The translations under genes were made by a program, and so were the position numbers. This document shows, one piece after another, positions 2,458-59,148 of a stretch of DNA of 64,000 nt. The notes under the pieces are model-generated. The model worked only from the letters and a program-made list of their open reading frames with translations. It made no database searches and had not been told where the DNA came from. The stretch lies in the IMG/VR virus record IMGVR_UViG_3300045921_000730, positions 62,001-126,000 of that record, one strand, 5' to 3'. Position 1 is the first letter of the stretch; every line of letters starts with the position of its first letter.

Positions 2458-2467
2458 TAGTATATTA

Positions 2468-3824
2468 TTAGAAGCAAAACTGAAATTGTATATATAGATT
2501 ATAACCAATATAAAAATAATTTCTAAGAATGATCACCTACAAACTTCCAATTCAGCTAGCTGATGAAGAAAAGAAGATGATCCTTGAATTCCAAAGGATC
2601 CAATCTTCAATGATTCGCACTGCTTACAAACAAGCTGAATTTGGTTGTACCGAAATTTCTGTAAGACAGGAAATTCGAGATAGGTTCAAAAGTCAGCTTG
2701 ATTCCTGGTTCCAACAATCGGCGGTCAAATGTGGGATCGGAATGTTCAAGTCGGAACATGAAACAAATAAATCTGGTCGAATCTTTGGTGGCAAAGGCAA
2801 TCTGATTAGACGTGCAAAGGGACTTATTTCAAAAGAAGAATGGAAACAACGACGGCTTCTTCCGTTGTATCTAATTGGTGAAGCTCCTATCAAAGGCAAT
2901 CGCAAGTTCGAGTTCCACGAGGATCATGTCATTTTTAAGCCATTCAAAGGGACAAAGATCAAGATTGATCTTCCATCAATGAGGAAGAACTGGTCAAAGA
3001 TTTGGAAACAACTCTTGGTCATGGTTTCAGAAAAACAATTACCAATCACAGTCTCTCTAACTACTGATTCCATTTCCTTTTCTTTTGATGATGTTAAGGT
3101 AAAACAAGAGATCAGAAAGATTCCAAAGCCAATCAAGAATAGATATGCAGGCATTGATCTGAACCCAAATTATATTGGCATCTCGGTTTTTGATGGAACA
3201 AAGTTGATTGAAACCAAGATGTTCTCGTTGAAGTCATTGACTGGAAAACATGCCAGTTCATCAAAACTTGAACACGAAACAAGAGAAATCGGACATGCAA
3301 TAGGTAAGTGGCTTCAACATCTACGAGTTGATAAGCTATTTGTCGAAAAACTTGAATTCAAACAGGGTGACAAAGGTATTGGTAAAAACTTTAATCGCTT
3401 AACACAGAACCAATGGAAGAAAATAACTTTAAGGTCAATTCTAGCCAAATACTTCAAGTTATATGAAATCAATGCAGCATATTCCTCAACCATAGGAAAC
3501 ATTCTGCATCCCGAATTACCAGACCCGATAGCCGCAAGTACTGAGATTGCACAACGAGGCTACCGGCTTGTGATACTCAAGAACAAACAGTTCTATCCAA
3601 AACTACCAGCAATAAAGTATCTAGAGGACCTATGGAAGGAAACCAAGATACCTTTGGTCAATAACTGGAAAGAACTACATTCTTGGGTCAAAAACTCGAA
3701 ATTGAAATATCGAGTTCCGGTTCCAGACGAATCGGTTTTTAGAATTTTTCAGTCACCAGCTAGTTTGGTTGGTGTTCTATAGATTTGTATTGCTTATATG
3801 AATTTATAAGGAAAATTTATTTTA
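2468..3824 (+). mobile_element. TnpB-only element, family 2, copy 1
   Basis: Ends shared with 57797-59148 and 24880-25140: begins (TT)AGAAGCAAAACTGAA after ATATTA, ends GGAAAATTTATTTTA. Confidence 0.85.
2529..3782 (+). CDS. tnpB: TnpB-like nuclease lacking the Cys zinc ribbon (family 2)
   Basis: AGIDLNP (RuvC-I), FVEKL (RuvC-II), NAAYSSTIG...PDPIAASTEIAQRG (RuvC-III region). Confidence 0.8.
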   Translation: MITYKLPIQLADEEKKMILEFQRIQSSMIRTAYKQAEFGCTEISVRQEIRDRFKSQLDSWFQQSAVKCGIGMFKSEHETNKSGRIFGGKGNLIRRAKGLISKEEWKQRRLLPLYLIGEAPIKGNRKFEFHEDHVIFKPFKGTKIKIDLPSMRKNWSKIWKQLLVMVSEKQLPITVSLTTDSISFSFDDVKVKQEIRKIPKPIKNRYAGIDLNPNYIGISVFDGTKLIETKMFSLKSLTGKHASSSKLEHETREIGHAIGKWLQHLRVDKLFVEKLEFKQGDKGIGKNFNRLTQNQWKKITLRSILAKYFKLYEINAAYSSTIGNILHPELPDPIAASTEIAQRGYRLVILKNKQFYPKLPAIKYLEDLWKETKIPLVNNWKELHSWVKNSKLKYRVPVPDESVFRIFQSPASLVGVL

Positions 3825-3843
3825 CACAAACAATCAAATAGTT

Positions 3844-4848
3844 ATGGAATATACATCTCTCGAAAACATTATTAAGCAGCACGTTTACCTTCCTTCACAA
3901 AGAAAAAATGGGTGGCATCCCGTTCTTTGTAAGATATGCAACGACCATGGCAAAAAAGGTAAACGTGCTGCATTTAAATTTGAAAACAATACAATAGGTT
4001 ATAACTGTTTTAATTGCGGACACACTGCTTTATATGATCCTTCTGTTCATCAAATAATACCAAAAAACATGGTGCAAGTATTGACTGCTTTCGGTATAGA
4101 AGAACATGAATGGAAACAATGTTTGTTGGAAAACTTAAAAAAACATCCAGAGTTTTCTAAGCAAAAACAAAAAGAAATAGATTATAACCCAACAGAAATA
4201 CAACTACCAGAGTTCTTTGTAGAACTAAAAAACGATACAAATGAGTGGTCGCAATATGCAATTGAATATTTAAAAAATCAAAGAGGAATTAATTATAAAG
4301 ATTATCCTTTTTACATTTGCAATAACATAACGAATAACCCTTTATCGAAAAAATGGTACGGAAGATTAATTATTCCAATTTATAAAGATAATAAAATAAT
4401 TTTTTATCAGGGAAGAGATTTATCAAATAAGCGAAAAACAAAATATCTTTCACCAAATGTAGAACGAAGTAAAGTACTATATGGTTTTGACCATTTATTG
4501 ACAAATGAACATTTACCACTATATATTTGCGAAGGGTTCTTTGATGCATTCTTATTGAATGGCGTTGCTGTATTTGGTAGAAAAATTTCCAAAGAACAAA
4601 TTTTTTGGATTAATAAATCACCAAGAAAAAAAGTTGTCGTACCTGATCGTTTTGGTGATAATAGCGATCAATTTGCTGAACAAGCACTAAAACTTGGTTG
4701 GGGCGTAAGTACTCCTGATATTGGGGACGCAAAAGATGTAAGCGAAGCGTTTATGAAATATGGGAAAATATATACACTGCAATCAATAAAAGAAAACACA
4801 CACGAAGGTCTTTTAGCACAAATTAAAACAAAATTTTATTGTGAATAA
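3844..4848 (+). CDS. DNA primase (T4 gp61-like)
   Basis: N-terminal CKIC..CFNC Zn finger; YQGR; TOPRIM ICEGFFDA; PD and KDVSE motifs. Confidence 0.88.
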   Translation: MEYTSLENIIKQHVYLPSQRKNGWHPVLCKICNDHGKKGKRAAFKFENNTIGYNCFNCGHTALYDPSVHQIIPKNMVQVLTAFGIEEHEWKQCLLENLKKHPEFSKQKQKEIDYNPTEIQLPEFFVELKNDTNEWSQYAIEYLKNQRGINYKDYPFYICNNITNNPLSKKWYGRLIIPIYKDNKIIFYQGRDLSNKRKTKYLSPNVERSKVLYGFDHLLTNEHLPLYICEGFFDAFLLNGVAVFGRKISKEQIFWINKSPRKKVVVPDRFGDNSDQFAEQALKLGWGVSTPDIGDAKDVSEAFMKYGKIYTLQSIKENTHEGLLAQIKTKFYCE

Positions 4849-4856
4849 AAAATATA

Positions 4857-5069
4857 ATGACAGAAGAAAATGAACAAATTCGTGCCGATAAATGGTGCAA
4901 TATGTCTCTTAATGAGTTGAACAAACAACGCGATATTTTGCTTCAAAAGATATCGATGTTATCGACGCTTGGAATTAATTCTTCACCAACGATCAACGCT
5001 CTATATAAAGCGCACCAACAAGCATACGATCATTTAAACGAAATTATTGATAATCGATTCAAAACATGA
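4857..5069 (+). CDS. Hypothetical protein
   Basis: 70-aa ORF with an ATGA overlap to the next gene. Confidence 0.6.
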   Translation: MTEENEQIRADKWCNMSLNELNKQRDILLQKISMLSTLGINSSPTINALYKAHQQAYDHLNEIIDNRFKT

Positions 5070-6880: not shown

Positions 6881-6887
6881 CAATTTT

Positions 6888-6929
6888 TCTCCCTCTGTTA
6901 TAAATATGTTTCAAGATAATAGAGGGAGA
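6888..6929 (+). promoter_or_regulatory. RBS-sequestering hairpin containing a late promoter, upstream of the endonuclease gene
   Basis: TCTCCCTCTGTTAT pairs with ATAATAGAGGGAGA (covers the SD); TATAAATA at 6899-6906. Confidence 0.75.
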
Positions 6930-6933
6930 CGAA

Positions 6934-11939: not shown

Positions 11940-11952
11940 TTCTTCGGCCCTC

Positions 11953-12008: not shown

Positions 12009-15000
12009 TTAACCACATTTACTGGAACCACAATCTGCACACTTTTCGCATCCTTCCTGATAAATGATGTTATGAGATCCACAGTTTTGGCAGACTTTAC
12101 CTTCAATCTTCTCACCGTCCTTAATAAAGGATGATAGGTATTTCTTGATTGAAAACAAGAACGAACCTGCATACGCGTCTTCAACTTTATCAAGAGTTGT
12201 TACGATATTACGAATTAACACACCATGACGAAGATTGAGTGAAATCATACGAGCGACCTTTGTAACATTATTATCACCTGCAATCTTTTCGAGAACTTTG
12301 TTGATGTGCTTTTCAGGAATATTCTTCGTACGTGCAAGATCTGTTAACAACTCAACGGCATTGTTGGTTAATGTGTTCTTTTCGTGACTGTTTGTATGAA
12401 CAAAGAAACCAAACGGGCGTGTTTTGTTATCATCCCACCACAAAACCGTAAGATACCATTTTTTACCTTCTGCCTTAAGTGTTTTCACAGTTGCTGGTGC
12501 ACTGTCAGGAAGTTGTACATCTTCAAGAACGATTTCTTCATCGATGTCACTAATATTTTTTTCGTCTTTAGCAGCAAGAACTGTTGTCATTGTTCCTGTA
12601 CGATATGTAGTAACACCTTTAACATAACCTGAAATATATGCATCAAGGTAAATGTTTTTGAAATCTTCAAAGCTATAATCGTTTGGAACATTAACGGTCT
12701 TACTCATAGCACTATCGACCCAACGAGCAAATCCCTTCAAATCATTTACATGATCTTGAACGCTCATACCAAGAGCGGTTGCAGCCCAGTCTGCTGTCGG
12801 ATCCCATTCGCCGATCTTTTTCATAAAACGAACACCATAATCTTCACATAACACTTCCTTTGTAAGACCACGATTCTTGTCAATTTTATAGACTGTACCA
12901 TCGGGTGCGACGCCACGAAGAATTTCTTCGTCACCCTCTTTAGTAAATTTAAACATTTCTGTCTCATGCCATGCACCCTCATACCACTTTGGACACACAT
13001 CAGCAATTTCTTCCGGCATTGTGTTTACGATTACTGTACGAATGTATTCATGTAAAAACACTGGTTCAAGACCACCGGAAACCACATTTGCTAAAATAGA
13101 AGTGTTTCCCGTAGGTTGAATTGAAAGAAGTGAACTATTACGAATACCTGTTGTGCGAAGTTTTTCCATATATTCGTCCGAAAGATTAAGCAACTTTATA
13201 AAAGGACCTTCCGCATGCTTCACAGGATCACAATAAGAAAACTTACCTTTCTCGACAGCCAAATCAATTGAAGCTTCATAAGCTGTTCTGGCAATTGTAC
13301 TCATTACTTGTTCACGAAGTTGATTAGCGCGATCTGATGCAAAGCGAGCTTTCAACATATAAAGCGCTGACCCCCAGCCTAAAATACCAACGCCAATACG
13401 ACGCTTGTTTTTAATTGAATGTGCATATTCGGGAAGTGGTGCATTTGTCAAATCGTTAATATTATCAAGAAAACGAACAAGATATTTTGTATACTTCTTG
13501 ATTAATTCTAGATCAAACCCTGAACGATCCGAATTAACGAATTGTGTTAAATTCAAAGAACCAAGATTACATACACCAGAAGGTGCTAATGTCTGTTCGC
13601 CGCAATTTCCTGTATAACACCACTCAGTAGGAAATACATGTTCATTATGCATGACACTAATATCCCACACATCTGCAGATTCAACAGGCTTAACAGAAAC
13701 TACTTCAACAAAGTCTAAATTGTGGTGGGTTCTTTTATCAGACACTTGACTAATAATATTTTTAAGTTTTTGTTGTTTAACTGGATGAGAAATATCAAAA
13801 ACGTTAATAAATTTTAAAACTGCCTGTCCACCAACAGCAACATCCCAGCGATCATATGATTTATTATATTCTTCACCATTTGGAAACGATACATTTTTTG
13901 TCGTTGTATTCCATATCATTGCTGGAACCCCTGCAAAACTAATTAGTTTTGCAAATTCTTGTGCTAAATCTTTTCGCGAAGTTGTTAATGTAATTTTCAA
14001 ATTGTTTGGATCATCGCTAACACATCCGTCCGCGCTCAATAAACCATCAACGAATCCTTTGATATATTGATCGTTGCTTTCCCAAACACTTTGTGGAATT
14101 TTTTTATTACCAGGAGTTAATTTGTACTTGTTTAATAATATATCCACTAACTCCTCGTCGCTAAATTGAAAATACAATTCACTAGCGCCATAATTTTGTC
14201 GTTGAATTAATGTTGATGGTAATTTTTTCATTCTGTTTACTATAGATAGTACTCGTTCTGCCATTGAACGTTCTTGCATACTAAATGCAATACCACAATT
14301 GTAGCGACCATCAGACAATTCACTGATCCAACCATCTCCAAAGAAATATCCAACAAAGAATCCTTCATCATATGTTAGGGTAAGATCACCATAGATACCA
14401 ATATCTTCATTTCTATTCAATGGAATAAGATCTCCAATTTTAAGATCTTTGGTATCTACCTTATAGATGCGTTTCATCTTTGAATCATACACAGGCCAGC
14501 GATGTTCTCTAGTTGCTCGAATCATTTTATTTGCCCCAAAAGAAATTTCTAACAATTCTTGATTCTTTCCAGATAAACGACACGAAGCTAGAGCCCATGT
14601 ACCATCCAAAGATTTCACCTCAAATTGTTTTCCTTCTAGTGTTTCAATAGGAAAAATTCCTTGTTTTGTATGAACAAGAGTACCAGCTGGCATTGATGGA
14701 TTTGTTGCAAATACTGTTTCTGCATAATTTAATGGTAAGAAATAATTAGCACGATCAAGAAACAATACGCCTGGCTCAGCACGATTGTAAGTGCTTTCCA
14801 TAATCAAATTCCATAACCATGAAACAGAAATTGTGTTGTATACTTTTACAGGATATCCCTTTGATTTCCACAACTTAATATTTCCATCCCAATCAGTTTT
14901 GTATTGAGGATGTGTGGTGTCGGGAAAAATTAAATTCCACTTATCCAATTCCATGCGCTCTTGTTGTAAAACAGTATTGTTTGTATCGTCTGTGTTTTTT

Positions 15001-17887: not shown

Positions 17888-18085
17888 TTGACTTTTACTT
17901 ACCGATATAGTAATCTATTAACGTCTTGAATAAAAATATCAAGATTTTCAATACCATAAGAATTACGGGAATTGATGTTTGTGGAGATGTGAATTCTATT
18001 GTAAAGAATTCAACCCAGAAAGTTAGTTATTCTATAGAATAACTAACAGTTGATATAATTTTCAAAGATCCGCTAAATTTAGCGG
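17888..18085. promoter_or_regulatory. Divergent intergenic control region with perfect palindromes
   Basis: TTGACT at 17888; 26-bp palindrome at 18022-18047; 16-bp palindrome at 18070-18085. Confidence 0.45.
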
Positions 18086-24211: not shown

Positions 24212-24895
24212 ATGTTTATTCACAAATCTGCACACCGGCCGATGGAATTAAAAACCATCGAAAATTCACAAGGACGCTTTTATATTACGCCTGATGGAAA
24301 AAAATATCCATCAATTACAACTCTGCTTAGCACAAAAGAAAAGCCCGGTTTGGTGGAGTGGAGGAACTCTTTGGGTGCTGAAGCGGCTGCTAAGGAAACA
24401 AAACGAGCTGCTGAAAGAGGAACAGCAGTTCATGCTATGTTGGAACTATTTTTAAAAAACGACACCGATCCTGTGTCAAACGTTAATAAAAATGTACCAA
24501 TATCAGTTAATCATGTCGCTGAATTTAATTCAATAAAACGATATATTCAAAAACATGTCAATAATATTGTTCTTCAAGAATCTGCTTTATATAGCGACAC
24601 ACTAAAAGTTGCAGGGCGCGTAGATTGTATTGCTGAATGGGATGGTAAATTATCTGTAATAGATTTCAAAACGTCCACAAATAACAAAAATAAACAAATT
24701 ATTGAAGATTATTTTCTTCAAACAACAGCCTATGCTTTAATGTTCGAAGAAATATATAAAGAAACAATTGAACAAGTTGTAATTATAATTTCTGTCGAAA
24801 AAGGAATTGTACCCCTGATATATAAAGAATCTGTTGATTCATATATGGAACCTCTCGTAAGAAGAATAAATACATATTACAAGAAGCAAAACTGA
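24212..24895 (+). CDS. PD-(D/E)xK (Cas4/RecB-like) exonuclease
   Basis: YPSITT, RGTAVH, AGRVDC, VIDFKTS, QxxAY. Confidence 0.85.
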   Translation: MFIHKSAHRPMELKTIENSQGRFYITPDGKKYPSITTLLSTKEKPGLVEWRNSLGAEAAAKETKRAAERGTAVHAMLELFLKNDTDPVSNVNKNVPISVNHVAEFNSIKRYIQKHVNNIVLQESALYSDTLKVAGRVDCIAEWDGKLSVIDFKTSTNNKNKQIIEDYFLQTTAYALMFEEIYKETIEQVVIIISVEKGIVPLIYKESVDSYMEPLVRRINTYYKKQN

Positions 24896-25140
24896 AGAAC
24901 AAACAGTTCTATCCAAAACTACCAGTAGTATCGTATCTAGAGGACCTATGGAAGGAAACCGAGATACATTTGGTGGAAACATGGAAAGAATTGCATTCTT
25001 GGGTCAAAAACTCGAAATTGAAATATCGAGTTCCGATTCCAGATGAATCGGTTTTCAGAATTTTCCAGTCGCCAGCTAGTTTGGTTGGTGTTCTATAGAT
25101 TTGTATTACTTATATGAATTTATATGGAAAATTTATTTTA
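24880..25140 (+). mobile_element. ORF-less mini-derivative of TnpB family 2
   Basis: Left end AGAAGCAAAACTGAA fused to the last ~245 bp of the element; follows ATATTA. Confidence 0.88.
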
Positions 25141-25155
25141 CAAGGAGAGAACTTA

Positions 25156-37527: not shown

Positions 37528-37757
37528 ATAATCAATTCAAGAAAACCTGATGTTCTTTAGACGTCAGGATGAATTGAATTGATTTTTGAAATAGACATGG
37601 ATAGAGATTTAAATGCTGCCATTAACATTCTGAAAGAAGGTATCAACCTTTTCAATACCGTAGGAACTACGGAAATTAACGCCTGTGGAGATATGAGTTC
37701 TGAAGTAAGGAACTCAGCCCAGGAAGCTAGTTGTTCTTTAGACAACTAGCAGTTCAC
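37528..37757 (+). mobile_element. Internally deleted family-1 TnpB element (left end, omegaRNA region, right end)
   Basis: Left-end hairpin shared with 11297; 37597-37757 matches 845-1005; the right-end TCA is the stop of ORF 37754-38284. Confidence 0.9.
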
Positions 37758-46800: not shown

Positions 46801-49800
46801 GCCTTGTGTTCCCGGAATACTTTGGACACTAAAATTAAATCTGTCTTCTACACGAGAATTTATTCCTCTTGTTTGATAAGCCCAATCAATAAATCGTTCT
46901 ATTTCAAGTTGCCACGAAACTGTTCTTTGTGTATCTGGATCGGTTTCATAAACTTCTACTAAATTATATCTTACATTTTTATCTTCTTGATATGCCTTAT
47001 ATCCATCAATAATATTAATCAGGCGTTGGAAACCAGCAATCGTTGATGGTGGTGAAAATGTGCGGATTTTTGTCTTATCTAATGCATAATGGAACCAAAG
47101 TTCACGCGAAGGACCAACGCCTCCAAATACAAAGAAACTTGAATCAACTTCACCGACATATTGTTCACCATTTCCTTGATTAACGATATCAATTGCTATA
47201 TTTGCGTTAGCGTTTGCAATAGAGTCCGCTAATCTGAATCCTTTGGCACCAACTTTTATAATATAAAATTCTCTCGATGTTGTTAATGGTGCTGGTAATA
47301 TTTGTGAAGATGTTATAAAAACAACTTGACCAGTTTCCCACGGAAGTTCCACATCATTAATGTCAACAACGCCATCAGCAATGGACGACGGTAAAAGTTC
47401 ATTGAGAGTTATTCTTGTCTTATCAGACGATGGGTCATAAACTGACGATGATACAGAATATACACCATCGTTGGCTGTTGATCCGCTGATCGTTATTTCT
47501 ACTTGAGGAACAAAATGATTTACTTGATCGCCACCAACTTCTATCAATTTTGCATTTGACAAAGCACCAGTTATTCTAAAAGCAAACGCCGATGCTGTAT
47601 TTGTTATTGGATCAACAATAAATGGATATTGTTTCACATCATAATAAAATATTGGTTTCGATACTAAGGATAAAACATCTAAAGACATTCTCCACTGCGT
47701 TTGATTGTTATATTGTACAATTTTTGGCGGAGTTTTCAAAATTGTAACTTGGAAAGCATCTAGCCACACATCGTCTATTGCTCCCATATTTGAAAGAACC
47801 ACGTTGTAATCTTGTTGGTCTATATCATAAAAACGATTATTAATATCCAACGATGTTGTATCAACAATACCACTAAATTGATACGAAAGTTTTGGATCCC
47901 AATTTACCCAATAATTTCTGAAGTCGCCATTTGTATCATAACCACTAAATCTGTTATTATTAACATACCATTGGTTTAAACCACGGGCTGTAAACAAAGC
48001 ATTTTGAAATACATCACCATGAAATAGTGCATCTTCATGACTATATACTTGACACAACTGCTGTTCAATTTGAAGATTGTTTACACGTGTAAAATTCAAA
48101 CCAAAAGCATAATGCATAAATCTTACTGGTTGCATCTTAAATGCAACAATCATTTTATGATATACATATTCACTCGAAACAGACCACAGCCACTCAGTTG
48201 GACCACCTTCTCCATAAACAAAGTTTGAGCCTGGTGCCACTATTTCACCACTAAAGCTCGTAAACAACGATCTTACATATGTTGGAGTAGCATTTGGACC
48301 AAGTGTTGTTAATGCAAAATATGGTGGCAACAAATCATCAGGTGAATAAACTGCTGATGTTGATCCACACGGTGTTGTTGCTCCCGAAGATGTCAAACAA
48401 TCATCACTAATATTAACAGAAAAATAAATGTATGTTGGTAAAACTTGATTGTCTGCTATTGGATTACCAGTACTTAAAGAACCGTCAGGATATGTTCTTC
48501 CTGCTGGAACAATACCAACTCTAATATTTTGCCACATTCCTGTTAGAGTTGCATGATTATATATCCATCGTCTGTTTCCAGTTAGATCAAGATATTCGTC
48601 ATCCCACCACAACGGTTTATCATGATAGCCTTGAAGTTTCCATGGTTCAAGATGTGGATATGGTGTTCCATACCACCTTGTATAAAGTTCTTGCCAAGAT
48701 GCAGCGATTAGCGGCGAAACAAAAGTTGTTGGTGGTGTTGTAATTGTAGAGTTTATGTAGTTCCACGTAAATGCGTCTTGAGCATTATATTGTAAGTTTT
48801 CAAATGGAAAAACAATTTTGTTGTTTTCTACAAACGAATAAAATTGTTGTTTTTGTTTTTCGTCATAAACAGCCTGTTCACCAACGTCAGGTGTTAACGA
48901 GCTGTAATCAAAAACTAAGTTTTTGTAATCAGGTGAAACTTGATATAATTTTTCTTCAATACTATAAATTAATTCACACAAAATTTTACGAATGTCTTTC
49001 TCAACCCATCCCAACGAAACATTATTAGCAGGACCAACAGCAACCCACGTCAATCCTTGCTTTTCATACATTTGGTTTAAGAATGAATTGTAATAGACAA
49101 TACCATCTGGAAGTTCATTTCCGTTACTGTCTGTAAATAAAGGAGGCGTTGTACTGATTATTGCTTCAAATCTGTATAAAATTCTTTCGACGTTTTTATA
49201 CCAATAAACACCCGTTCTTGTTTGAAAATAACTTTGAAAACTTGCAAAAGTATTTGGTGGTGCACTTGAATTAATTACACCATATGTTGTATCTGGTTCT
49301 CTTGAATCGGGCGTGTTAATAAGTAAACGTATAATAGCATCCCGTTCCGTTAACGATAAATTTATTTGTTCGCGGTGACCATCGTGACAATAAACTTCAT
49401 ATATATTTAAACCTTTATCAATAATAATGTGCGGTTTAAATTTTTCACTTAAACCAAACATAGGGGGTGTTGAAATCCAATTACGAACACCCGTTTCTGT
49501 TAGTTGATTGAAGGCCGATGTGTCACCATAAACAAAACCATAAAAATCATTCGATTCATATTGATTCAAAATATTTTGATTAATAACACCCTGTTGATTA
49601 TAAATGTCGTCATTTGTCGTACGAGTCATTAAAGAAATAAATGAATTTAAATACAATTGTTTTATTGTCAGCAAACCATTATCATATTGATTTTGCGCAA
49701 ATTCAATAACACTTAACGGAGTTGTTTTTTGTTCGTTTATTGCTGAAATTAATGTATCATAACTATCATTATATTCTTTTATAGTACCACCGACCCAATA

Positions 49801-52800
49801 TTTCCATTCTTGTTGTGGCAAAATATTAACATTCGTTGTTTGTTGTGCATCTATAATTGTTTGAAAGTGTGTAATTAAATCTGCGTACGAAATTTGTTGT
49901 TTGTTTTTGTGCTCAATATTAAAACGCCATTGTTTTGGAATTTCCCAGTCGCCGTTTGGATCTCCAATCGTCAAAGGTTGTCTGTTTTTATCAACCCACT
50001 GTGGTGTGTATGAACCTTCTGACCATTGGTACCACGGACCTGAGCTATTGTATGTATATTGGTTTACTGATCTCCATATTGTAGTTAATGTCGGATCAGC
50101 CTTTTCAATCAGCAGCCCTTGAGGCGTTGGTGAATTTAATGGATTATCATATTCGGGCCAAGCAATTTCTTGCCAAACGTTCGAAAGTGCCTGTTTTACA
50201 ATTCGGTTTTTAGTATCATACCAAATACTATATTCATTATTAACTAAGTATGGTGGCGGTATTTCGCCAACATATGGTTTTGAAACTCTAATAAAATCAT
50301 TTGTATCAAAATAAACAAATGACATTTCCCAAACGTTGTTATTTCTATATTTGAGCTGATTTGTTTTTTCGTTATACCAAAAAGTTAAATTTGGTACTCG
50401 TTCGTCGTTTAAGCGAAACGCATATGTTTTTCCATCGTCACGTTCAACAAGCGTTTGTTCAAAGACAAAATTTGATGTTTGATTTTCGGCAACAACGCGT
50501 CGTTGAATATGTGGATTTACCGGGGCTGTTTCAGACTCCAAAAAACCAAAAAGACGTTTAGCACCTATAACTTCATTTGTGCATACATCGTATACATTGA
50601 ATAAAGGATATTGGTTGAACGATTTCTTTACTTGTTCTGTTTTAAAATATTCTATCGTTGATTTATAAACAGGTTGTGTTCCTGCAATCAATGAGGCATT
50701 AAAATCGCTTTCATTTTCAATTGTTCTTATGGGGACAAACGATTTACCTAAATCATTATAGGCATGTGGTGCTATTTGTATTTGAACAACATCAAATTGC
50801 TGTAATGGTTGGTCAAAAACAATTCCAGAAACAAATTCAAACGTTTGTGTATTATATGTTGTTGTACCAACTGCCGTATAAATTGGAATACCAACATTAG
50901 TAATTTCTTGATAATTACCATACTGTCTTATACCATTTACATATACAGCCAACGATTCTTGATTTGCTAAGGCAAAAGATGACGTTCCGCCAACAATGTT
51001 ACCGTCTGGAGTTGCGGTTAGTGGAATTGTTCCATTGACAGTTATTATTGTATTTCCAAAAGATAATGTTGAACTCTGAACAGAATATATACCATTAGCA
51101 CCACCAGTATTATTTCTAACGATAAACGGCGTTTCGGTACTAAACACTGATGTATAATCACCCAGTACAGTAAACGTCCCGTTAACACCAGAGACAACAC
51201 CAACAATTAATAAAGTAGAGGTTTGTGTATACTGTAATGAAACGTCCAGTTTAATGTTTGTTGTTGGCACGTTTACGGTTGTCGTTTGAAAATATTGACC
51301 AACAGTTATTGGTCCGACGTTTGTTGTCCCCGTATAAGAGAATGGTGCTTGCGTTGATGACAAGGCCCGTTTCAATATTGGATTTTCTTGTTGTGTGTCT
51401 GTTGGATGATCTTTGAAATTATTGACATCCAAAACCCAATGAGCATGATAACCGCGCCACAAATCACCAACTGACGTATTTGTTGGTTCAATTCTTACTT
51501 TATTGATACCACCACCGACCAAAGGTGCGGTAAAAGTATTTTCAGAAATCTTAACAATTGTTATTAAATGTCTGCCCTGAACGCCAGCAGGATCCGTTGG
51601 TAACGGTTCACGAACCAAAGAATATTCAACAGTATAAGTTTTGTTTAAAATTCCATCATCTCTAATTCTAAAAACAAAACCTGGAACAAATATTTCGCTC
51701 CAGTCAATATCTTTTTGTACAGACGAAGTATTATTGTACAAATATATAAACCAATTACCAGATGCTGGTGGTGTTTCTACAGCAATATAGTCAATTACGG
51801 GCGTTAATTCTAATAATGTTGGTTGAGAATTAACACTCTGAAAATCTTGACCTATTTCAGAACGATATTTCCACTGATATGTTCTCTTTGTCCAAGAATT
51901 TAGTTCGACACGAGAATCATATTCAAGAATTGGTACCTGTGCTCTTTTTACATTTTGTGTTGTTGAAAGTTGTGATTTATGGATCCATCTATTTTCTGTA
52001 GACCACTGCGAAGGTGTTATTAACTGGTCAAAACAAGAAACCGTTAAATCCCACAACACATCATTCAAAGACATATCAAGAACACGCTGAGAAAAATTGT
52101 AAAATATTAATACCCAGGTTGTTCCATTATATTGAAAGAGTGCGTCTTGATTTGTATCATACCACAGAGCACTTATGGTTGGTGGACCGTTTTGCGAAAT
52201 CCAACTTGCTTCTGTTGGATGAGAATATGGTTGGAGATACGTTTGGAAATCAGACGTGTTGTTGTCCCATAAACTTAAGTCCCAACCATAATCACCATAA
52301 CAAATACAGTTAGTTTCTTTAATAAAAATATCAAGTATTTCAGACAATGAAACAACGCTTGTAATTACTGGATTTGTTTCAACCCACGTTGTTCCATTCC
52401 AAGACATTAATTTTTCGTTTGTTGTATCAAACCACCACGTACCAATAATTGTTTGAGGCGTTGTTATTGGTTGCGTTGATGATTTTAAGACAAAATCTTG
52501 CTCGACACAAAGTTTAGTTTTATTCTCGAGAAGATTTTCTTCCTCGGAACAAAACTCTGGTTCAAAATACTCAACTGACAATATTGTATAATACTTGTTA
52601 TCAATATTAATATTTGGTGTCAATGTTGAAGGCTTGATAAAAATTTGTGCATTTGGCTGAAAAAGAGCGTCAAGTCTTCCATCTAATATGATACAATTAT
52701 TAACTATATCAATCTCAACAATCGGAAAAGTACTTCCGTACGTATTCAACAGTTGTTGATAAACGTTTGTTCGTGCTTGATATTTTAAGCACGGATTTTC

Positions 52801-53253
52801 AATTGTTAAATAGTTTGGTTGAATGTTATTGGAAGACACCCAATAATAGTCTTGATAATTAACAAACATATCAAGGTTTATGGGAGGAATCCAGTTAAAC
52901 TCTTGAGCTTTCCCCCACTTATTCATTCTATCCTTATCAACACCGAGAAACTCGAGCTGTTTTTCAAACGACTTGAATGTTAAAACTGTTTCTGTGTTTC
53001 CTGCTCTAGTATATGCTAGCGGCTGAAGTTGAAACGCCTGAAGTTGTGGTGTTGGCTCCGGTAATTGACGACTGTTTTGTAATTGTGATGGTTCACCTAT
53101 TAAACCTGAAACAAAAGTTGTGTCATCTTTCGTCAAAAATCTATTGAAAGATTGTTCGAATACACTTTGATTAACATCTGAATTATATACATCTGGCAGG
53201 TATTCAATTATATTTGTTCTTGGTTTGTTGTCGTTATCAGAGTTGCTAGCCAA
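40849..53253 (-). CDS. Giant (4134 aa) virion/baseplate protein with repeated beta modules
   Basis: TTG start with an AAGGAGG SD; follows the gp6-like gene; internal repeats. Confidence 0.75.
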   Translation of the reverse strand: MASNSDNDNKPRTNIIEYLPDVYNSDVNQSVFEQSFNRFLTKDDTTFVSGLIGEPSQLQNSRQLPEPTPQLQAFQLQPLAYTRAGNTETVLTFKSFEKQLEFLGVDKDRMNKWGKAQEFNWIPPINLDMFVNYQDYYWVSSNNIQPNYLTIENPCLKYQARTNVYQQLLNTYGSTFPIVEIDIVNNCIILDGRLDALFQPNAQIFIKPSTLTPNINIDNKYYTILSVEYFEPEFCSEEENLLENKTKLCVEQDFVLKSSTQPITTPQTIIGTWWFDTTNEKLMSWNGTTWVETNPVITSVVSLSEILDIFIKETNCICYGDYGWDLSLWDNNTSDFQTYLQPYSHPTEASWISQNGPPTISALWYDTNQDALFQYNGTTWVLIFYNFSQRVLDMSLNDVLWDLTVSCFDQLITPSQWSTENRWIHKSQLSTTQNVKRAQVPILEYDSRVELNSWTKRTYQWKYRSEIGQDFQSVNSQPTLLELTPVIDYIAVETPPASGNWFIYLYNNTSSVQKDIDWSEIFVPGFVFRIRDDGILNKTYTVEYSLVREPLPTDPAGVQGRHLITIVKISENTFTAPLVGGGINKVRIEPTNTSVGDLWRGYHAHWVLDVNNFKDHPTDTQQENPILKRALSSTQAPFSYTGTTNVGPITVGQYFQTTTVNVPTTNIKLDVSLQYTQTSTLLIVGVVSGVNGTFTVLGDYTSVFSTETPFIVRNNTGGANGIYSVQSSTLSFGNTIITVNGTIPLTATPDGNIVGGTSSFALANQESLAVYVNGIRQYGNYQEITNVGIPIYTAVGTTTYNTQTFEFVSGIVFDQPLQQFDVVQIQIAPHAYNDLGKSFVPIRTIENESDFNASLIAGTQPVYKSTIEYFKTEQVKKSFNQYPLFNVYDVCTNEVIGAKRLFGFLESETAPVNPHIQRRVVAENQTSNFVFEQTLVERDDGKTYAFRLNDERVPNLTFWYNEKTNQLKYRNNNVWEMSFVYFDTNDFIRVSKPYVGEIPPPYLVNNEYSIWYDTKNRIVKQALSNVWQEIAWPEYDNPLNSPTPQGLLIEKADPTLTTIWRSVNQYTYNSSGPWYQWSEGSYTPQWVDKNRQPLTIGDPNGDWEIPKQWRFNIEHKNKQQISYADLITHFQTIIDAQQTTNVNILPQQEWKYWVGGTIKEYNDSYDTLISAINEQKTTPLSVIEFAQNQYDNGLLTIKQLYLNSFISLMTRTTNDDIYNQQGVINQNILNQYESNDFYGFVYGDTSAFNQLTETGVRNWISTPPMFGLSEKFKPHIIIDKGLNIYEVYCHDGHREQINLSLTERDAIIRLLINTPDSREPDTTYGVINSSAPPNTFASFQSYFQTRTGVYWYKNVERILYRFEAIISTTPPLFTDSNGNELPDGIVYYNSFLNQMYEKQGLTWVAVGPANNVSLGWVEKDIRKILCELIYSIEEKLYQVSPDYKNLVFDYSSLTPDVGEQAVYDEKQKQQFYSFVENNKIVFPFENLQYNAQDAFTWNYINSTITTPPTTFVSPLIAASWQELYTRWYGTPYPHLEPWKLQGYHDKPLWWDDEYLDLTGNRRWIYNHATLTGMWQNIRVGIVPAGRTYPDGSLSTGNPIADNQVLPTYIYFSVNISDDCLTSSGATTPCGSTSAVYSPDDLLPPYFALTTLGPNATPTYVRSLFTSFSGEIVAPGSNFVYGEGGPTEWLWSVSSEYVYHKMIVAFKMQPVRFMHYAFGLNFTRVNNLQIEQQLCQVYSHEDALFHGDVFQNALFTARGLNQWYVNNNRFSGYDTNGDFRNYWVNWDPKLSYQFSGIVDTTSLDINNRFYDIDQQDYNVVLSNMGAIDDVWLDAFQVTILKTPPKIVQYNNQTQWRMSLDVLSLVSKPIFYYDVKQYPFIVDPITNTASAFAFRITGALSNAKLIEVGGDQVNHFVPQVEITISGSTANDGVYSVSSSVYDPSSDKTRITLNELLPSSIADGVVDINDVELPWETGQVVFITSSQILPAPLTTSREFYIIKVGAKGFRLADSIANANANIAIDIVNQGNGEQYVGEVDSSFFVFGGVGPSRELWFHYALDKTKIRTFSPPSTIAGFQRLINIIDGYKAYQEDKNVRYNLVEVYETDPDTQRTVSWQLEIERFIDWAYQTRGINSRVEDRFNFSVQSIPGTQGYKQNGFQVLKSLTDITGLQSITYSFLLSVDGSPFTSVAIDGSLSQTYQQLITEINAQLTLLAIPAIASFETFNNGAVRITSNSTGPFSSVNIVDVDLFGSLFDSTPLQNSVNGSGSLFAFSDQVPAWVAGTAVKVGTTGSLPTGLSADVTYYVHNSTIPGLFELSTTKTKTPSSAVVVSSAGGGLQFISQFTTRTQFPSFEINPMRNNVWITTPQGVLANIISGPYEDIRIKQSIFDQYGRILTPDKLLVYREDKRSRISIRPEIPNDLKPSIAGIDDPYNYIHMGGGHFFITGYQHVLIFNDYTSGNFLVFDQFKGLQAQRFSISYYEKNDFSLRPTLGGYYLLGNQYERNIEGQITDMRNYYSVYNTNDFSPVVDYARNLIGFNKSLPYLDLLNINKKSQFEFYRGAIQSKGSTNSITAFINNKRFISANVDEAWAWKIAEYGDAREKVYPELKLFASDGTLEDVRFEFLTNNEASQSQFVEQAKSQRFEVISFRDDTRWYEYPDQKRTLNGSVLFLDAKVVSRMTIFVKNVPPLEEQANRIDYWYDTSTLTLRKFDSTISGPYLTKWIPVDGIVRASDMYYVKLGQPCDTVRVIRKTLSGFPGYQEVLFNVPLFDAKATGLNPLINYTTSITFNNLQTINISVLGSQVQTFGELIDFLNSKITPYGRAQMYNDTIRITNAFKGSSSDVSISILDLLFNSLDDYLSVQPSQPGVDSFNDINEYTAESLIVDGGGTDGFIRINSQTLAFDFTAFYDILEIYCLRPSFASNNPGKLLDKISNVVISEVPYWHPAYNKHYYLTEHNINVFKDSDPAKYTNTLIFDDVSLNPWNEVEVGTIWANSSYLDYLPYFDDKIYTDVNDRLFNWGIFSDIGNTKVYQWIQSTVPPQQYTGIALVQEADTSISSELKLNGTPKTTIFKRMREPLVGDVVFLNPIQQTQGRGYQDVQFAIPVNGTTDTGIINDNTPGYQEVEWRTTSGTPFVINAATGIVWNSQSTPPYTAIIRVDGIDYNVSVGSVPNFGGLVSAINQDLDTIAVASIVAGRLRITSLSSSENSSVQILDINLFNSLEVGVATYAYQDVFVGNNKTSASPTGLVGPTTYFHPIDVNGNYFDISVLGSSAPIYGMLIEEINADITGATASLVNGNIRIRSNVLGSAGSVTIGESLTVLETNPNGGSNAITSGGGSPWINPNSSLALDNISTTCTRSGSGGSKNPVTYPPAPQQTLTIRGFNFNIPVSATILGIEAQVRKFYNTSGSVGSPIVNDFIVQLRKDVLGPVGNNLASGAWPLSFSTTTYGSPSNLWGTTWTPADLNNSNFGIDITASLGLTVPAASTGSVSANIDYVTIKVYYTTTGGTLFTTALSGFVAVGLPIPGQDAYFATLIPPVNGTNGTPLTMTVVVDGVPVPITIDGDASQTFTELIANINSAANGTFSVELTPSGNLRFISSSVGTNSTIALIDNNLISSIVGVPSGLLTPVTFLLSVPGDYGWIEVPYNSKDPFEENDLTLFTSTDVLPTNIQQSVKYSVTNLQNLPIVAPTIQRFRIASNETLTNVNLIDAGSGILSVVPAFKLKNWLRKPLVKQSFNPNVDFATLTPSTIQLNSSFDKNDLVDVMVNGKIKLFKLLVNSSNQITLPSYTFNRSDFVTVVRQEPALTTEQINFDPDTEDDGTIHEQFKEDYEYTTITIADVNNNNRLTELYYYWVENTTYKNPNDPLSMPPIEIARTLRSIPISYLVVQKPQDDPSITETYGYGAIYGIVYSSPYLYNNFNVIPIFYRQAVLRNAASYIRTDDRYTLRFTRDLTLRDSLENGPSSVNLKNTHTEWKLIRQEQPFNIDRVLWDRLTESLIGFKIDDPTIRVPSLERELYDAVHGTDTQYGLGDDQTFVNGQLAKKTILNYLQRPDINFAPVDINSFFAQYSFDTPANIIAAMNAIYNTFGYKHVNAIWFEVLLDAFSTKSKYKELFKTSWIALTGVRILEVSGLFEE

Positions 53254-56826: not shown

Positions 56827-57796
56827 TTTTATTCCTTACGATTTATTAAAATATTTATTAAATAACATTTTTAAAAAATGACACAAAAAACAAAACTTAC
56901 AGATAAAATGATAAAGGATTGGATCGCAACGGGGTTAAATTCAAAACTCGTAGCTCAACGACATAACATCAGCTACTATACATTCCTTCCGCTGATCAAA
57001 GATTATATTAATACCTTAACGATAGACAATCTGATACAACTTGCTGAAAATAAAAACATTGACTTTAAATTCATTTCGCAAACAACAGCGTTATACAAAC
57101 AAATTTATGACGAAACATCATTTTTAAAACCAGAAAGTTCAATACGACAACGGCTGTTTCATATCAAACACAAAATAACCAGTGCACCAAAATGTAAATG
57201 CTGCAACAATTTAACAAACTGGGATAATACTCTAAAAAATTATAGAACATATTGCAGCATCAAATGTCAGTCAAATGACCCAGATGTCATTCTATCAAAA
57301 AAACAAACAAACGTAAAAAACAGAGGCGTCGAATATCCTGCACAAGATAAAAATGTACGCGAAAAATATAAAAAAACAATGATTAATCGATATGGGATAT
57401 CTCACGTAAACAAAACAAATAAAACCGAATCAATTAATAACTTTGACCTATTACACGACTTATATTGGGTACAACATTTATCAACGTTTGATATTGCCGA
57501 ACGGTTCGGAGTCAGCCAATCTTACATAGCAAAACTACTTCAATTATATAATATTGAACCACACACAAAATCTTGCTTTGAACAACAAATTGTTAATTTT
57601 TTAAAACAAGATTTAAACATAGATGTAATCCTGAACACAAGAAAAATAATATATCCAAAAGAAATTGACATTTTTTTGCCCAATTACAACATTGCAATAG
57701 AATGCAATGGATTATTTTGGCACAGTGAAATAAGTGGCGGAAAAAGTAACAAATACCACATCGAAAAAACTATATTATGTCAGCAAAAAAATATTA

Positions 57797-59148
57797 TTAG
57801 AAGCAAAACTGAAATTGTATAAATACGTTATAACCAATATAAATTTCTAAGAATGATCACCTACAAACTTCCAATTCAGCTAACTGATGAAGAAAAGAAA
57901 ATGGTCCTTGAATTCCAGAGGATCCAGTCTTCAATGATCCGTTCTGCATATAAGCAAGCCGAATTTGGTTGTACCGAAATTTCTATAAGACAGGAAATTC
58001 GAGATAGGTTCAAAAGTCAGCTTGATTCCTGGTTCCAGCAATCTGCTGTTAAATATGGAATAGGGATGTTCAAATCAGATCATGAAACTGGTCGATCTGG
58101 TCGAATCTTTGGTGGCAAAGGCAATCTGATTAGACGTGCAAAAAGGCTCATTTCAAAAGAAGAATGGAAACAAAAACGACTTCTTCCGTTGTATCTGATT
58201 GGTGAAGCTCCAGCCAAAGGAAATCGCAAGTTTGAGTTCCATGAAGATTATGTCATTTTTAAGCCATTCAAAGGGACCAAGATCAAAATCGATCTTCCTA
58301 ACATGAGGAAGAACTGGTCGAGAATGTGGAACCAGCTCTTGGTCATGGTTTCAGAAAAACAAATACCAATCACTGTTTCTTTGACCACCGACTTCATATC
58401 CTTTTCTTTTGATGATGTTAAGGTAAAACAAGAGATCAGAAAGATTCCAAAACCAATCAAGAATAGATATGCAGGCATTGATCTGAACCCAAATTATATT
58501 GGCATTTCTGTTTTTGATGGAACAAAACTGATTGAAACCAGATTGTTTTCATTAAAGACATTAACTGGAAAGAATGCCAGTGCTTCAAAACTTGAACATG
58601 AAACAAGAGAAATTGGGCATGCAATAGGTAAGTGGCTTCAGCATCTACGAGTTGACAAGTTGTTCATCGAAAAACTAGAATTCAAACAAGGCAATAAGGG
58701 AATTGGAAAGAACTTCAACCGCTTAACACAAAATCAATGGAAGAAAATAACCCTAAAGGCGATCCTAGCTAAGTACTTCAAACTGTATGAAATCAATGCT
58801 GCTTATAGTTCGACCATTGGTAACATTCTGCATCCCGAATTACCAGACCCGGTAGCAGCTAGTACTGAGATTGCACAACGAGGCTACCGGCTTGTGATAC
58901 TCAAGAACAAACAGTTCTATCCAAAACTACCAGTAGTATCGTATCTAGAGGACCTATGGAAGGAAACCGAGATACCTTTGGTCAATAACTGGAAAGAACT
59001 ACATTCTTGGGTCAAAAACTCGAAATTGAAATATCGGGTTCCGGTTCCAGATGAGTCGGTTTTCAGAATTTTCCAGTCGCCAGCTAGTTTGGTTGGTGTT
59101 CTATAGATTTGTATTACTTATATGAATTTATATGGAAAATTTATTTTA
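57797..59148 (+). mobile_element. TnpB-only element, family 2, copy 2
   Basis: Same ends as 2468-3824; follows ATATTA. Confidence 0.9.
57853..59106 (+). CDS. tnpB: TnpB-like nuclease (family 2), close paralog of 2529-3782
   Basis: Same length (417 aa) and motifs. Confidence 0.8.
   Translation: MITYKLPIQLTDEEKKMVLEFQRIQSSMIRSAYKQAEFGCTEISIRQEIRDRFKSQLDSWFQQSAVKYGIGMFKSDHETGRSGRIFGGKGNLIRRAKRLISKEEWKQKRLLPLYLIGEAPAKGNRKFEFHEDYVIFKPFKGTKIKIDLPNMRKNWSRMWNQLLVMVSEKQIPITVSLTTDFISFSFDDVKVKQEIRKIPKPIKNRYAGIDLNPNYIGISVFDGTKLIETRLFSLKTLTGKNASASKLEHETREIGHAIGKWLQHLRVDKLFIEKLEFKQGNKGIGKNFNRLTQNQWKKITLKAILAKYFKLYEINAAYSSTIGNILHPELPDPVAASTEIAQRGYRLVILKNKQFYPKLPVVSYLEDLWKETEIPLVNNWKELHSWVKNSKLKYRVPVPDESVFRIFQSPASLVGVL

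What the first reader, a model, noticed from the sequence alone, without database searches (positions are those of the whole stretch)
2462..59148. Zinc-ribbon-less TnpB family with a target motif readable from three insertions
Seen: all three copies follow ATATTA (2462, 24874, 57791) and end in TTATTTTA. Excision restores the endonuclease frame (KNIMLFH) and the exonuclease end YYKERT* with a TAATG overlap to the next gene. The 417-aa protein keeps D/E/D RuvC residues but lacks CxxC pairs, and no transposase is visible in the window. The mini-copy has a patch found in neither full copy, suggesting more copies elsewhere. It is a candidate compact nuclease with a predicted (A)TATTA TAM.
Basis: partly seen in the sequence, partly recalled or inferred. 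Interest (0 to 1): 0.68.

Follow-up and report, generated by a model that had tools for sequence, protein, structure and literature searches.

The report
Zinc-finger-less TnpB transposon in a phage
A jumbo phage from hot-spring mats carries several copies of a small IS607-type mobile element. Its TnpB nuclease has lost the usual zinc finger but keeps its catalytic residues and a conserved guide-RNA-like 3' end. A natural uninterrupted version of one insertion site shows that the element sits directly after the motif TATTA.

Summary
Two full copies (window 2468-3824 and 57797-59148) and one 261-nt mini-copy (24880-25140) all follow ATATTA and end in TTTATTTTA. Two more copies lie elsewhere in the 244-kb phage record.

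A metagenome contig from another study carries the uninterrupted homing-endonuclease gene and skips exactly 1352 nt. ATATTA is therefore target DNA, and there is no target duplication.

The 417-aa protein has a TnpB/Cas12f fold (pLDDT 93.5; Cas12f Z 15). D210, E273 and D332 are invariant, no CxxC pairs occur anywhere in the family, and dN/dS between the two full copies is 0.08. The last ~240 nt form a structured RNA with strong covariation, as expected of an omegaRNA. The mini-copy keeps just that part.

Zinc-finger loss in some large TnpB branches is already noted in the literature (PMC10691335). I class this as a new variant of a known kind. RNA-guided cleavage and the TATTA TAM remain predictions.

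The parts
2462..2467 (+). ATATTA target motif (predicted TAM) 5' of copy 1. It lies 4 nt after the stop codon of the prohead-protease-like gene (1747-2457).
   Evidence: Sequence. The motif is target DNA by analogy with the empty allele of copy 3.
2468..3824 (+). Copy 1: a full tnpA-less element of 1357 nt, from TTAGAAGCAAAACTG... to ...GGAAAATTTATTTTA. The boundaries are ambiguous within the shared TTA.
2529..3782 (+). tnpB-like ORF of 417 aa (P0001). RuvC residues D210, E273 and D332 are present. There is no zinc finger.
   Evidence: dN/dS against copy 3 is 0.08.
3582..3824 (+). Predicted omegaRNA/reRNA scaffold of about 240 nt. It overlaps the last ~200 nt of the ORF and runs to the right end.
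   Evidence: MFE z-score -3.68. Covariance models R1 and R2 hit at 3680-3824 and 3582-3692.
3825..3844 (+). Predicted guide-encoding right flank of copy 1 (CACAAACAATCAAATAGTTA). Its length is assumed; the primase gene starts at 3844.
   Evidence: Inference from TnpB/IS607 biology. The flank is unique in the genome.
24874..24879 (+). ATATTA target motif 5' of the mini-copy, inside the last codons of the exonuclease gene (24212-24895).
24880..25140 (+). Mini-copy of 261 nt: a 17-nt left-end stub (CAAGAAGCAAAACTGAA) joined to the last 244 nt of the element. It is essentially the RNA scaffold plus the right end.
   Evidence: R1 scores 159.8 bits at 24996-25140 and R2 scores 120.9 bits at 24898-25008.
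57791..57796 (+). ATATTA target motif 5' of copy 3. It is retained in the natural empty allele.
   Evidence: the joint 57793 to 59146 skips 1352 nt with a 4-nt ambiguity.
57797..59148 (+). Copy 3: a full tnpA-less element of 1352 nt that interrupts a homing-endonuclease gene.
57853..59106 (+). tnpB-like ORF of 417 aa (P0002), 92% identical to P0001, with the catalytic residues intact.
58906..59148 (+). Predicted omegaRNA scaffold of copy 3.
59149..59168 (+). Predicted guide-encoding right flank of copy 3 (TGTTGTTTCATATATTTGAA). In the empty allele it lies directly 3' of ATATTA.
   Evidence: The guide role is an inference.
56878..59786 (+). HNH/Hef-like homing-endonuclease gene, split by copy 3 into 56878-57796 and 59149-59786.
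   Evidence: PHROG 3339 positions 51-327 and 329-535. The intact allele is seen in run X7.

Best explanation
These are non-autonomous (tnpA-deleted) copies of an IS607-family insertion sequence living in a T4-like jumbo phage.

Each full copy encodes a TnpB-superfamily RuvC nuclease from a large, mostly phage-borne clade. That clade has lost the zinc-finger (TNB) insert between RuvC-II and RuvC-III and carries a conserved ~70-aa C-terminal extension instead. The last ~240 nt of the element, overlapping the 3' end of tnpB and ending at the right end, form a conserved structured RNA. I interpret it as the omegaRNA/reRNA scaffold, and read-through into the right flank would supply the guide.

Inferred mechanism, by analogy with characterised TnpB systems. 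TnpB with this RNA recognises 5'-(A)TATTA followed by the flank-matching sequence. That combination exists only in the empty allele, because the occupied allele has the left end after TATTA. TnpB cuts the empty allele. The phage's very active homologous recombination then copies the element in from an occupied genome. This would act as homing between co-infecting or replicating phage genomes, and as restoration after excision.

Movement to new TATTA sites would be done by the serine recombinase TnpA supplied in trans. The crossover would fall in the TA (or TT) shared by the target (TATTA) and the right-end terminus (ATTTTA), without target duplication. Mini-copies that keep only the RNA and the ends could use TnpB in trans.
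For: **Shown**
- Host: a phage with prohead protease, primase, topoisomerase II, RNR and baseplate genes.
- Copies: five in the record, with identical ends.
- Empty allele of copy 3 in an independent metagenome. The skip is exactly 1352 nt, ATATTA is retained and there is no duplication.
- Second polymorphic site. It is occupied in L008 and run X8, with flanks ...AATACTATTA and ACAACTTCTTCG.... It is empty in this genome as ...AATACCATTA|ACAACTTCTTCG.
- Left flanks: six of six read TATTA. In a subfamily with only ~35% protein identity, four of five read ATATTA and the right end is ...GTATTTTA.
- Protein: AF2 pLDDT 93.5. Best fold matches are Cas12f (Z 15.2), Cas12k, ISDra2 TnpB (Z 11.9) and Fanzor2 (Z 11.5). 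The N-terminal half matches the N-terminal half of Cas12f (its WED/REC region) at Z 13.6, rmsd 2.9 A.
- Family membership: 44 of 58 members hit TIGR01766 and 12 hit NF040570 guided_TnpB.
- Catalytic residues D210/E273/D332 are invariant. No CxxC pairs.
- Selection: dN/dS is 0.08 at dS 0.52, and dS falls to 0.12 in the last 77 codons.
- RNA: z-score -3.68. About 90% of cells are paired, against 33-56% in slid controls. 28 of 34 and 15 of 21 pairs show compensatory changes. 0 of 500 shuffles reach the observed values.
- The mini-copy retains this RNA region.
- TnpA: an intact 197-aa protein (HTH plus serine-recombinase domain) lies directly upstream of tnpB in L009. It scores 166 bits against NF033518, cut-off 110. 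Homologues lie upstream in about 10 of 79 loci. L087, whose tnpB is 91% identical, has a broken copy.

**Inferred**
- RNA-guided cleavage.
- TATTA acting as the TAM.
- Homing between phage genomes.
- The identity of the crossover dinucleotide.
Against: - No RNA or expression data exist; no RNA run holds the region.
- The query protein itself hits no NCBIfam, PHROG or PDB sequence model. Profile comparison with a canonical TnpB from the same phage is weak (E 0.003).
- The zinc finger/TNB domain, part of the canonical TnpB architecture, is missing. Activity cannot be assumed.
- No cognate tnpA is present in the 244-kb record, which is 72% complete. The one found on a closely related contig is broken.
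- The left end of the short form aligns with the 3' end of tnpA in L087. It is unclear whether the short form still carries TnpA-binding sites.
- The covariation alignments were fitted to the model structure, which inflates pairing.
- The low dS at the 3' end could partly reflect gene conversion. Copy 1 and L087 are identical over the last 77 codons.
- A third subfamily shows other left flanks (GGTAA, TTAAC).
Confidence: 0.72

Rival explanations
1. TATTA is only the target preference of the serine recombinase. The zinc-finger-less protein is not an RNA-guided DNA cutter with that TAM. It could be an RNA-guided binder or regulator, or a nuclease with another substrate.
For: - Canonical IS607 target choice is made by TnpA at a matching dinucleotide (PMC10711439).
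- The target TATTA resembles the right-end terminus ATTTTA.
- The zinc finger is lost.
- TnpB derivatives that act as repressors are known in phages (papers listed).
Against: - The D/E/D triad and R343 are invariant across 58 diverged members. Known nuclease-dead derivatives lose these residues.
- In characterised IS605 and IS607 systems the TAM coincides with the transposon's target motif (PMC10711439).
- Purifying selection acts on both copies, and the guide-RNA-like structure abuts the right end.
Confidence: 0.15
2. The short elements no longer transpose. They reached their present sites only by homologous recombination or homing between related phages and by vertical descent. The shared ATATTA would then reflect a few ancient insertions.
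For: - No cognate tnpA in the record.
- The site at the exonuclease end is also occupied in a more diverged relative (loose end in X7).
- L008 shows a rearrangement through a copy.
Against: - At least six different sites carry the same short left end in very closely related genomes. The copies differ by 5-12%.
- Occupancy is polymorphic at two sites among genomes whose flanking DNA is about 98-99% identical.
Confidence: 0.08
3. The 417-aa protein is a free-standing, protein-only homing endonuclease or Holliday-junction resolvase. The 3' structure is a terminator or a protein-binding site.
For: - The RuvC core alone matches RuvC resolvases at Z 12-13.
- Phages of this kind are rich in homing endonucleases.
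Against: - The N-terminal 190 residues match the N-terminal half of Cas12f (its WED/REC region), which binds RNA and DNA in those complexes, at Z 13.6.
- Family members hit TnpB models.
- The conserved RNA spans ~240 nt with five or more covarying helices, far more than a terminator.
- A tnpA partner is present in relatives.
Confidence: 0.04

Closest known systems
IS607-family insertion sequences with TnpB (for example ISXfa1 and ISFba1; PMC10711439, PMC11061315)
   Same: - Gene order is tnpA (N-terminal HTH plus serine-recombinase domain) followed by tnpB.
- There are no terminal inverted repeats and no target duplication.
- A structured RNA overlaps the tnpB 3' end and runs to the right end.
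- Many copies lack tnpA.
   Different: - The ends and target share TTA (target TATTA, terminus ATTTTA). Canonical IS607 uses a GG crossover dinucleotide (PMC13565253, PMC10711439).
- The TnpB lacks the C4 zinc finger.
- The host is a lytic-type jumbo phage, not a cellular chromosome.
- No Rfam RNA family matches.
Canonical TnpB (ISDra2, PDB 8exa/8h1j) and Cas12f
   Same: - The overall fold order is WED/REC, then a RuvC domain with D-E-D in the canonical positions.
- The size is similar, about 400 aa.
- Fold matches are Z 11.9 to TnpB and Z 15.2 to Cas12f.
   Different: - There is no CxxC...CxxC zinc finger/TNB insert between RuvC-II and RuvC-III.
- The RuvC-III motif reads LPDPIAASxEIARRG, not DRDxNAAxNI.
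- There is a conserved C-terminal extension (FYP...W...KNSKLKYRVP).
- Sequence similarity is too low for the query to hit any TnpB HMM.
- No CRISPR array can fit next to the copies, because phage genes abut them.
Zinc-finger-less TnpB branches in the TnpB/Cas12 classification of Altae-Tran et al. 2023 (PMC10691335), for example the major clade RIIIr-4
   Same: The C4 zinc finger is lost, the clade is enriched in viruses, and the catalytic site is conserved, which implies activity.
   Different: RIIIr-4 is described as having the RuvC-III aspartate replaced by histidine. Here D332 is invariant. I could not place this family on that tree, because no sequences or supplements were available.
Fanzor2 of giant viruses (PDB 9b0l)
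   Same: It is a virus-borne, IS607-derived TnpB relative, with fold match Z 11.5.
   Different: Fanzors keep the zinc finger and have the catalytic Glu moved to six residues before it (PMC13565253). Here the Glu (E273) lies about 45 residues upstream of the YSS motif, the canonical arrangement, and the host is a bacteriophage.

Membership tests
TnpB (OMEGA) superfamily | RuvC-like nuclease domain with a conserved D-E-D triad | tested here: met
   D210, E273 and D332 are invariant in 58 members. The RuvC core matches RuvC at Z 12.8, rmsd 2.7 A.
TnpB (OMEGA) superfamily | N-terminal WED/REC architecture as in TnpB and Cas12f | tested here: met
   Residues 2-189 match the N-terminal half of Cas12f at Z 13.6, rmsd 2.9 A over 155 residues. 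Whole-protein top hits are Cas12f, Cas12k, TnpB and Fanzor2.
TnpB (OMEGA) superfamily | C4 zinc finger (TNB) between RuvC-II and RuvC-III | tested here: not met
   No CxxC pairs in any of 58 members. Only about 10 residues separate the YSSTIGN motif from D332.
TnpB (OMEGA) superfamily | Match to curated TnpB sequence models | tested here: inconclusive
   The query itself has no NCBIfam hit at E <= 1. Of 58 homologues, 44 hit TIGR01766 and 12 hit NF040570, with best E about 1e-11 to 1e-12.
TnpB (OMEGA) superfamily | Structured RNA overlapping the 3' end of the gene and ending at the transposon right end | tested here: met
   Models R1 and R2 find it at the same place in 27 and 49 loci. About 90% of cells are paired, against 33-56% in slid controls, and 43 of 55 pairs show compensatory changes. 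Transcription was not tested.
TnpB (OMEGA) superfamily | RNA-guided, TAM-dependent DNA cleavage | not testable with these tools
   This needs a TAM depletion or cleavage assay.
IS607 family | Serine-recombinase TnpA with an N-terminal HTH, encoded upstream of tnpB | tested here: met
   Met in relatives only. L009 TnpA is 197 aa and scores 166 bits against NF033518, cut-off 110. Homologues are present in about 10 of 79 loci. It is absent from the window copies and from the record.
IS607 family | No terminal inverted repeats and no target-site duplication | tested here: met
   Comparing the empty and occupied alleles of copy 3 shows only a 4-nt identity between target and right end, with nothing duplicated. 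No inverted repeats were found.
IS607 family | Ends and target share a GG crossover dinucleotide | tested here: not met
   All copies end in TTTTA and insert after TATTA. The shared letters are TTA.
IS200/IS605 family | Y1 HUH transposase TnpA | tested here: not met
   NF033573 finds nothing in the record. The upstream genes in relatives are serine recombinases.
Type V CRISPR effector (Cas12f-like) | Adjacent CRISPR array | tested here: not met
   Copy 1 lies 4 nt after one phage gene and 19 nt before the next. Copy 3 lies inside a gene. No array can fit.
RIIIr-4 clade (PMC10691335) | RuvC-III aspartate replaced by histidine, together with loss of the zinc finger | tested here: not met
   The zinc finger is lost, but D332 is invariant. 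The clade description was read.
IStron (IS607/IS605 fused to a group I intron) | Group I intron RNA at the left end | tested here: not met
   No Rfam match at E <= 1 in window 2400-3950.

The most novel reading that the evidence does not exclude
A large clade of TnpB nucleases, with about 8000 members, mostly in tailed phages and annotated everywhere as 'hypothetical protein', has replaced the zinc finger by a C-terminal extension. It works as an RNA-guided homing endonuclease that spreads IS607-like elements between co-infecting phage genomes at TATTA sites. RNA-only mini-copies would borrow the nuclease in trans. The partner recombinase would use a TA core instead of the canonical GG core.
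Probability: 0.45. Interest if true: 0.65.

Novelty: new variant of a known kind. Interest (0 to 1): 0.52.

Why it matters
**A testable system.** The nuclease, the scaffold RNA limits, the guide position and the predicted TAM can all be read from natural occupied and empty alleles. It could show whether the zinc finger/TNB domain is dispensable for RNA-guided cleavage and what replaces it.

**Natural evidence for homing.** Insertions are polymorphic among nearly identical phage genomes. This bears on the proposed 'non-restorative homing' of TnpB transposons between co-infecting phages, and on an IS607 lineage with an AT-rich crossover site.

**Practical value.** This is modest. The protein is no smaller than the TnpBs already in use. 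An AT-rich TAM and a zinc-independent fold could still be useful.

Tried and rejected
- Direct sequence-family searches of the query (NCBIfam, PHROGs, PDB sequences) gave nothing useful.
- hhalign of the family profile against one canonical TnpB of the same phage was weak (E 0.003, RuvC-II only).
- The search for related loci with the 58-sequence alignment failed for lack of conserved stretches. With the single protein it found one locus.
- Exact-pattern searches for empty sites of copy 3 and the mini-copy in IMG/VR found none.
- Searches for the left-end sequence found nothing in metagenome contigs and only L008 in IMG/VR.
- The phage collection (GenBank) has no close relative of the copy 3 region.
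- The related 291-kb phage G001 has a single copy of the element, and its exonuclease is only 39% identical. It gave neither boundaries nor empty sites.
- There is no Rfam family, so this is not an IStron and not a known omegaRNA motif.
- I first suspected that ATATTA was the degraded start of tnpA (ATGTAT) and so part of the element. The empty allele and site A reject this.
- The C-terminal 73 residues folded alone gave a poor model (pLDDT 74.6, two helices). I made no fold search and make no claim about what replaces the TNB domain.
- No supplements of PMC10691335 are held, so the family could not be placed in that classification.
- Literature searches for a described zinc-finger-less or phage-homing TnpB gave only the general statements cited.
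Full report
**Setting.** The window is positions 62001-126000 of a 244,293-bp IMG/VR virus record, linear and estimated 72% complete. Its genes include a prohead protease, primase, split topoisomerase II, ribonucleotide reductase, a baseplate wedge protein, an exonuclease and homing endonucleases. This is a T4-like jumbo phage. GC content is about 34%. Runs that hold the sequence come from hot-spring and microbial-mat metagenomes.

**The observation.** Repeat finding and reading the sequence confirm two full copies and one mini-copy. A search of the whole record adds two more. One is cut by the record start (genome 1-1163). One has an internal deletion (genome 169736-170556). All four visible left junctions read ATATTA|TTAGAAGCAAAACTGAA, except that the mini-copy has CAAG in place of TTAG. 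All five right ends read GGAAAATTTATTTTA.

**Boundaries and target.**
- Copy 3 splits a homing-endonuclease gene exactly between PHROG 3339 profile positions 327 and 329.
- I laid Logan contigs of four metagenome runs on window 56900-59800. One 1322-nt contig from a different study (X7) covers 57005-57793 and continues at 59146-59678. It skips 1352 nt, with 4 nt (TTAT) that fit either side.
- The empty allele therefore reads ...AAAAAAATATTATGTTGTTTCAT.... ATATTA belongs to the target. The element is 57797-59148, give or take the ambiguity. Nothing is duplicated.
- The same call shows loose ends that reveal further insertion sites in the community. Their left flanks are ...ATTATG+TATTA and ...GTAAATAC+TATTA.
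- The second of these is the left flank in locus L008, an IMG/VR contig whose flanking DNA is 98% identical to this phage. Its matching right flank (ACAACTTCTTCGACAGG) was seen in run X8. In our genome the two flanks are contiguous, as GTAAATACCATTA|ACAACTTCTTCG on the minus strand near genome 12137. This is a second pair of occupied and empty alleles, and the empty one reads CATTA instead of TATTA.
- Six of six left flanks carry TATTA. Given the TTA shared with the right end, the chance expectation is 0.096 per site, or about 8e-7 overall.
- A distant subfamily (~35% protein identity; L051, L073, L043, L052, L038) has ATATTA at four of five left junctions and ends in ...TTTTGTATTTTA. Another subfamily shows different flanks.
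- For the mini-copy, joining the flanks gives ...INTYYKERT* overlapping the next ATG. The closest exonuclease homologues end in ...INTYYKEKSNG. This is weak support.

**The protein.**
- P0001 and P0002 (417 aa, 92% identical) hit no NCBIfam, PHROG or PDB sequence model.
- An exhaustive phmmer search found 882 cluster representatives at E <= 0.001, nearly all 400-470 aa. The word-index search found 590 at E <= 1e-5, all unnamed or 'hypothetical protein'.
- The ESM Atlas places the protein in an 8041-member cluster. About 59% of members are viral (Uroviricota), and some carry PF27229.
- In a 58-member alignment, G117, D210, N212, P213, E273, L275, S320, G323, D332 and R343 are invariant.
- Of those members, 44 hit TIGR01766 (TnpB-related), 16 hit the OrfB N-terminal model and 12 hit NF040570 guided_TnpB.
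- The AlphaFold model is confident (pLDDT 93.5, pTM 0.83). Foldseek and VIA-align rank Cas12f first (E 6e-9; Z 15.2), followed by Cas12k, ISDra2 and ISFba1 TnpB, and Fanzor2.
- Residues 2-189 superpose on the N-terminal half of Cas12f (its WED/REC region) at Z 13.6, rmsd 2.9 A. Residues 204-351 superpose on RuvC at Z 12.8.
- No CxxC motif exists between RuvC-II and RuvC-III. YSSTIGN is followed within about 10 residues by LPDPIAAS. A conserved C-terminal stretch follows (FYP, W380, K388, Y394, R395). Folded alone, this tail is not a stable domain.
- Between the two full copies dN/dS is 0.08 at dS 0.52, so both are under purifying selection.

**The transposase.**
- The record has no IS200-type TnpA. 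For IS607 it has only a 99-aa fragment, which belongs to a different, canonical TnpB cluster.
- A JGI contig (L087) encodes a 91%-identical TnpB with a resolvase-domain gene directly upstream. That tnpA has an in-frame TAA and a frameshift in an A-run.
- In L009 (68% protein identity; a 291-kb phage contig) the upstream gene is intact. It is 197 aa, with an HTH and a serine-recombinase domain, and scores 166 bits against NF033518 transpos_IS607, cut-off 110.
- tblastn finds homologues immediately upstream of tnpB in about 10 of 79 IMG/VR loci.
- The family is therefore IS607-type, and the window copies are tnpA-less derivatives.
- Canonical IS607 elements recombine at a GG dinucleotide (PMC10711439, PMC13565253). 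Here the letters shared by target and right end are TTA, so the crossover is probably TA or TT. This is an inference.

**The RNA.**
- The last 250 nt of copy 1 fold with z = -3.68.
- The right-end terminus ATTTTA and the preceding sequence are conserved in relatives down to 46% protein identity.
- A covariance model of the last 145 nt finds 27 matches, all just 3' of tnpB. Of the cells, 90.4% are paired, against 34-50% when partners are slid. 28 of 34 pairs show compensatory changes. 0 of 500 shuffles reach the observed values.
- A model of the preceding 111 nt, which lies wholly inside the ORF, finds 49 matches. Pairing is 90.3%, against 33-56% when slid, and 15 of 21 pairs are compensatory.
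- Synonymous divergence drops from 0.66 to 0.12 in the last 77 codons.
- The mini-copy starts a few nucleotides 5' of the first conserved helix. It keeps this RNA plus a 17-nt left stub.
- Caveats. The alignments are model-fitted. Gene conversion may contribute to the low dS. No RNA data exist.

**Interpretation.** The anatomy matches a TnpB element: target motif, left end, tnpB, an overlapping structured RNA, the right end and a unique flank. The most likely mechanism is RNA-guided cutting of the empty allele (TATTA followed by the flank sequence), then recombinational copying of the element. The serine recombinase would place it at new TATTA sites. Polymorphic occupancy among genomes whose flanking DNA is about 98-99% identical is what such homing, or recent transposition, would produce. 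It does not prove either. Cleavage, the TAM and the guide length are untested.

**Comparison with what is known.** Altae-Tran et al. [quoted passage not shown] They also state that the virus-enriched major clade RIIIr-4 lacks it. That clade has the RuvC-III Asp changed to His, whereas D332 is invariant here. I could not place the family on their tree. I found no paper that characterises a zinc-finger-less TnpB or a phage-borne IS607 with a TA core. It is a new variant of a known kind, of moderate interest.

Noticed in passing
window 56-997 (+); window 37597-37757; window 17893-18053: A second, canonical TnpB lineage lives in the same phage. ORF 56-997 scores 283 bits against NF040570, has a CxxC zinc finger and a DRDLNAAINI motif. 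Its last ~160 nt recur as solo remnants at 37597-37757 (99% identical) and 17893-18053 (about 63-70%). These are RNA/right-end-only mini-copies, parallel to the mini-copy of the finding.
   Followed up: partly
genome 48283-51435 (L007), outside the window: Two canonical TnpB genes (413 and 422 aa, both with zinc fingers) flank a 99-aa fragment of an IS607-type serine recombinase. This is a decayed canonical IS607 cluster.
   Followed up: partly
L008 (IMGVR_UViG_3300045922_000924) compared with genome ~12137 (minus strand) and ~206532: In this near-identical phage, an internally deleted element copy joins DNA that lies about 194 kb apart and in opposite orientation in our record. This suggests a rearrangement through element copies, or a chimeric assembly. 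The right junction there has no TATTA on its upstream side in our genome.
   Followed up: partly
window 24880-24883 and 25141-25144; L009 2329-2334 and 4294-4299: The mini-copy's left end starts with CAAG instead of TTAG, and CAAG is also the first 4 nt of its right flank. In L009, the putative left end after CTATTA starts with TAACAT, as does its right flank. Either the target resembles the circle junction or this is a repair footprint. It remains unexplained.
   Followed up: no
L087 2386-2971: The tnpA next to the 91%-identical TnpB is broken. It has an in-frame TAA at codon 17 of the HTH and a +1 shift in an A-run before the catalytic domain.
   Followed up: partly
window 12009-17294 (-): The ribonucleotide-reductase large subunit ORF is 1761 aa. 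RNR matches are confined to the C-terminal third, and there is an endonuclease-like match at residues 244-430. It probably carries one or more inteins or homing-endonuclease inserts.
   Followed up: no
window 40849-53253 (-): A 4134-aa ORF lies next to the baseplate wedge gene. I did not examine it.
   Followed up: no
genome ~12137, minus strand (site A): The empty allele of site A in this genome reads CATTA, where the occupied allele in relatives reads TATTA. This could be a motif-escape variant or simply the ancestral state.
   Followed up: no
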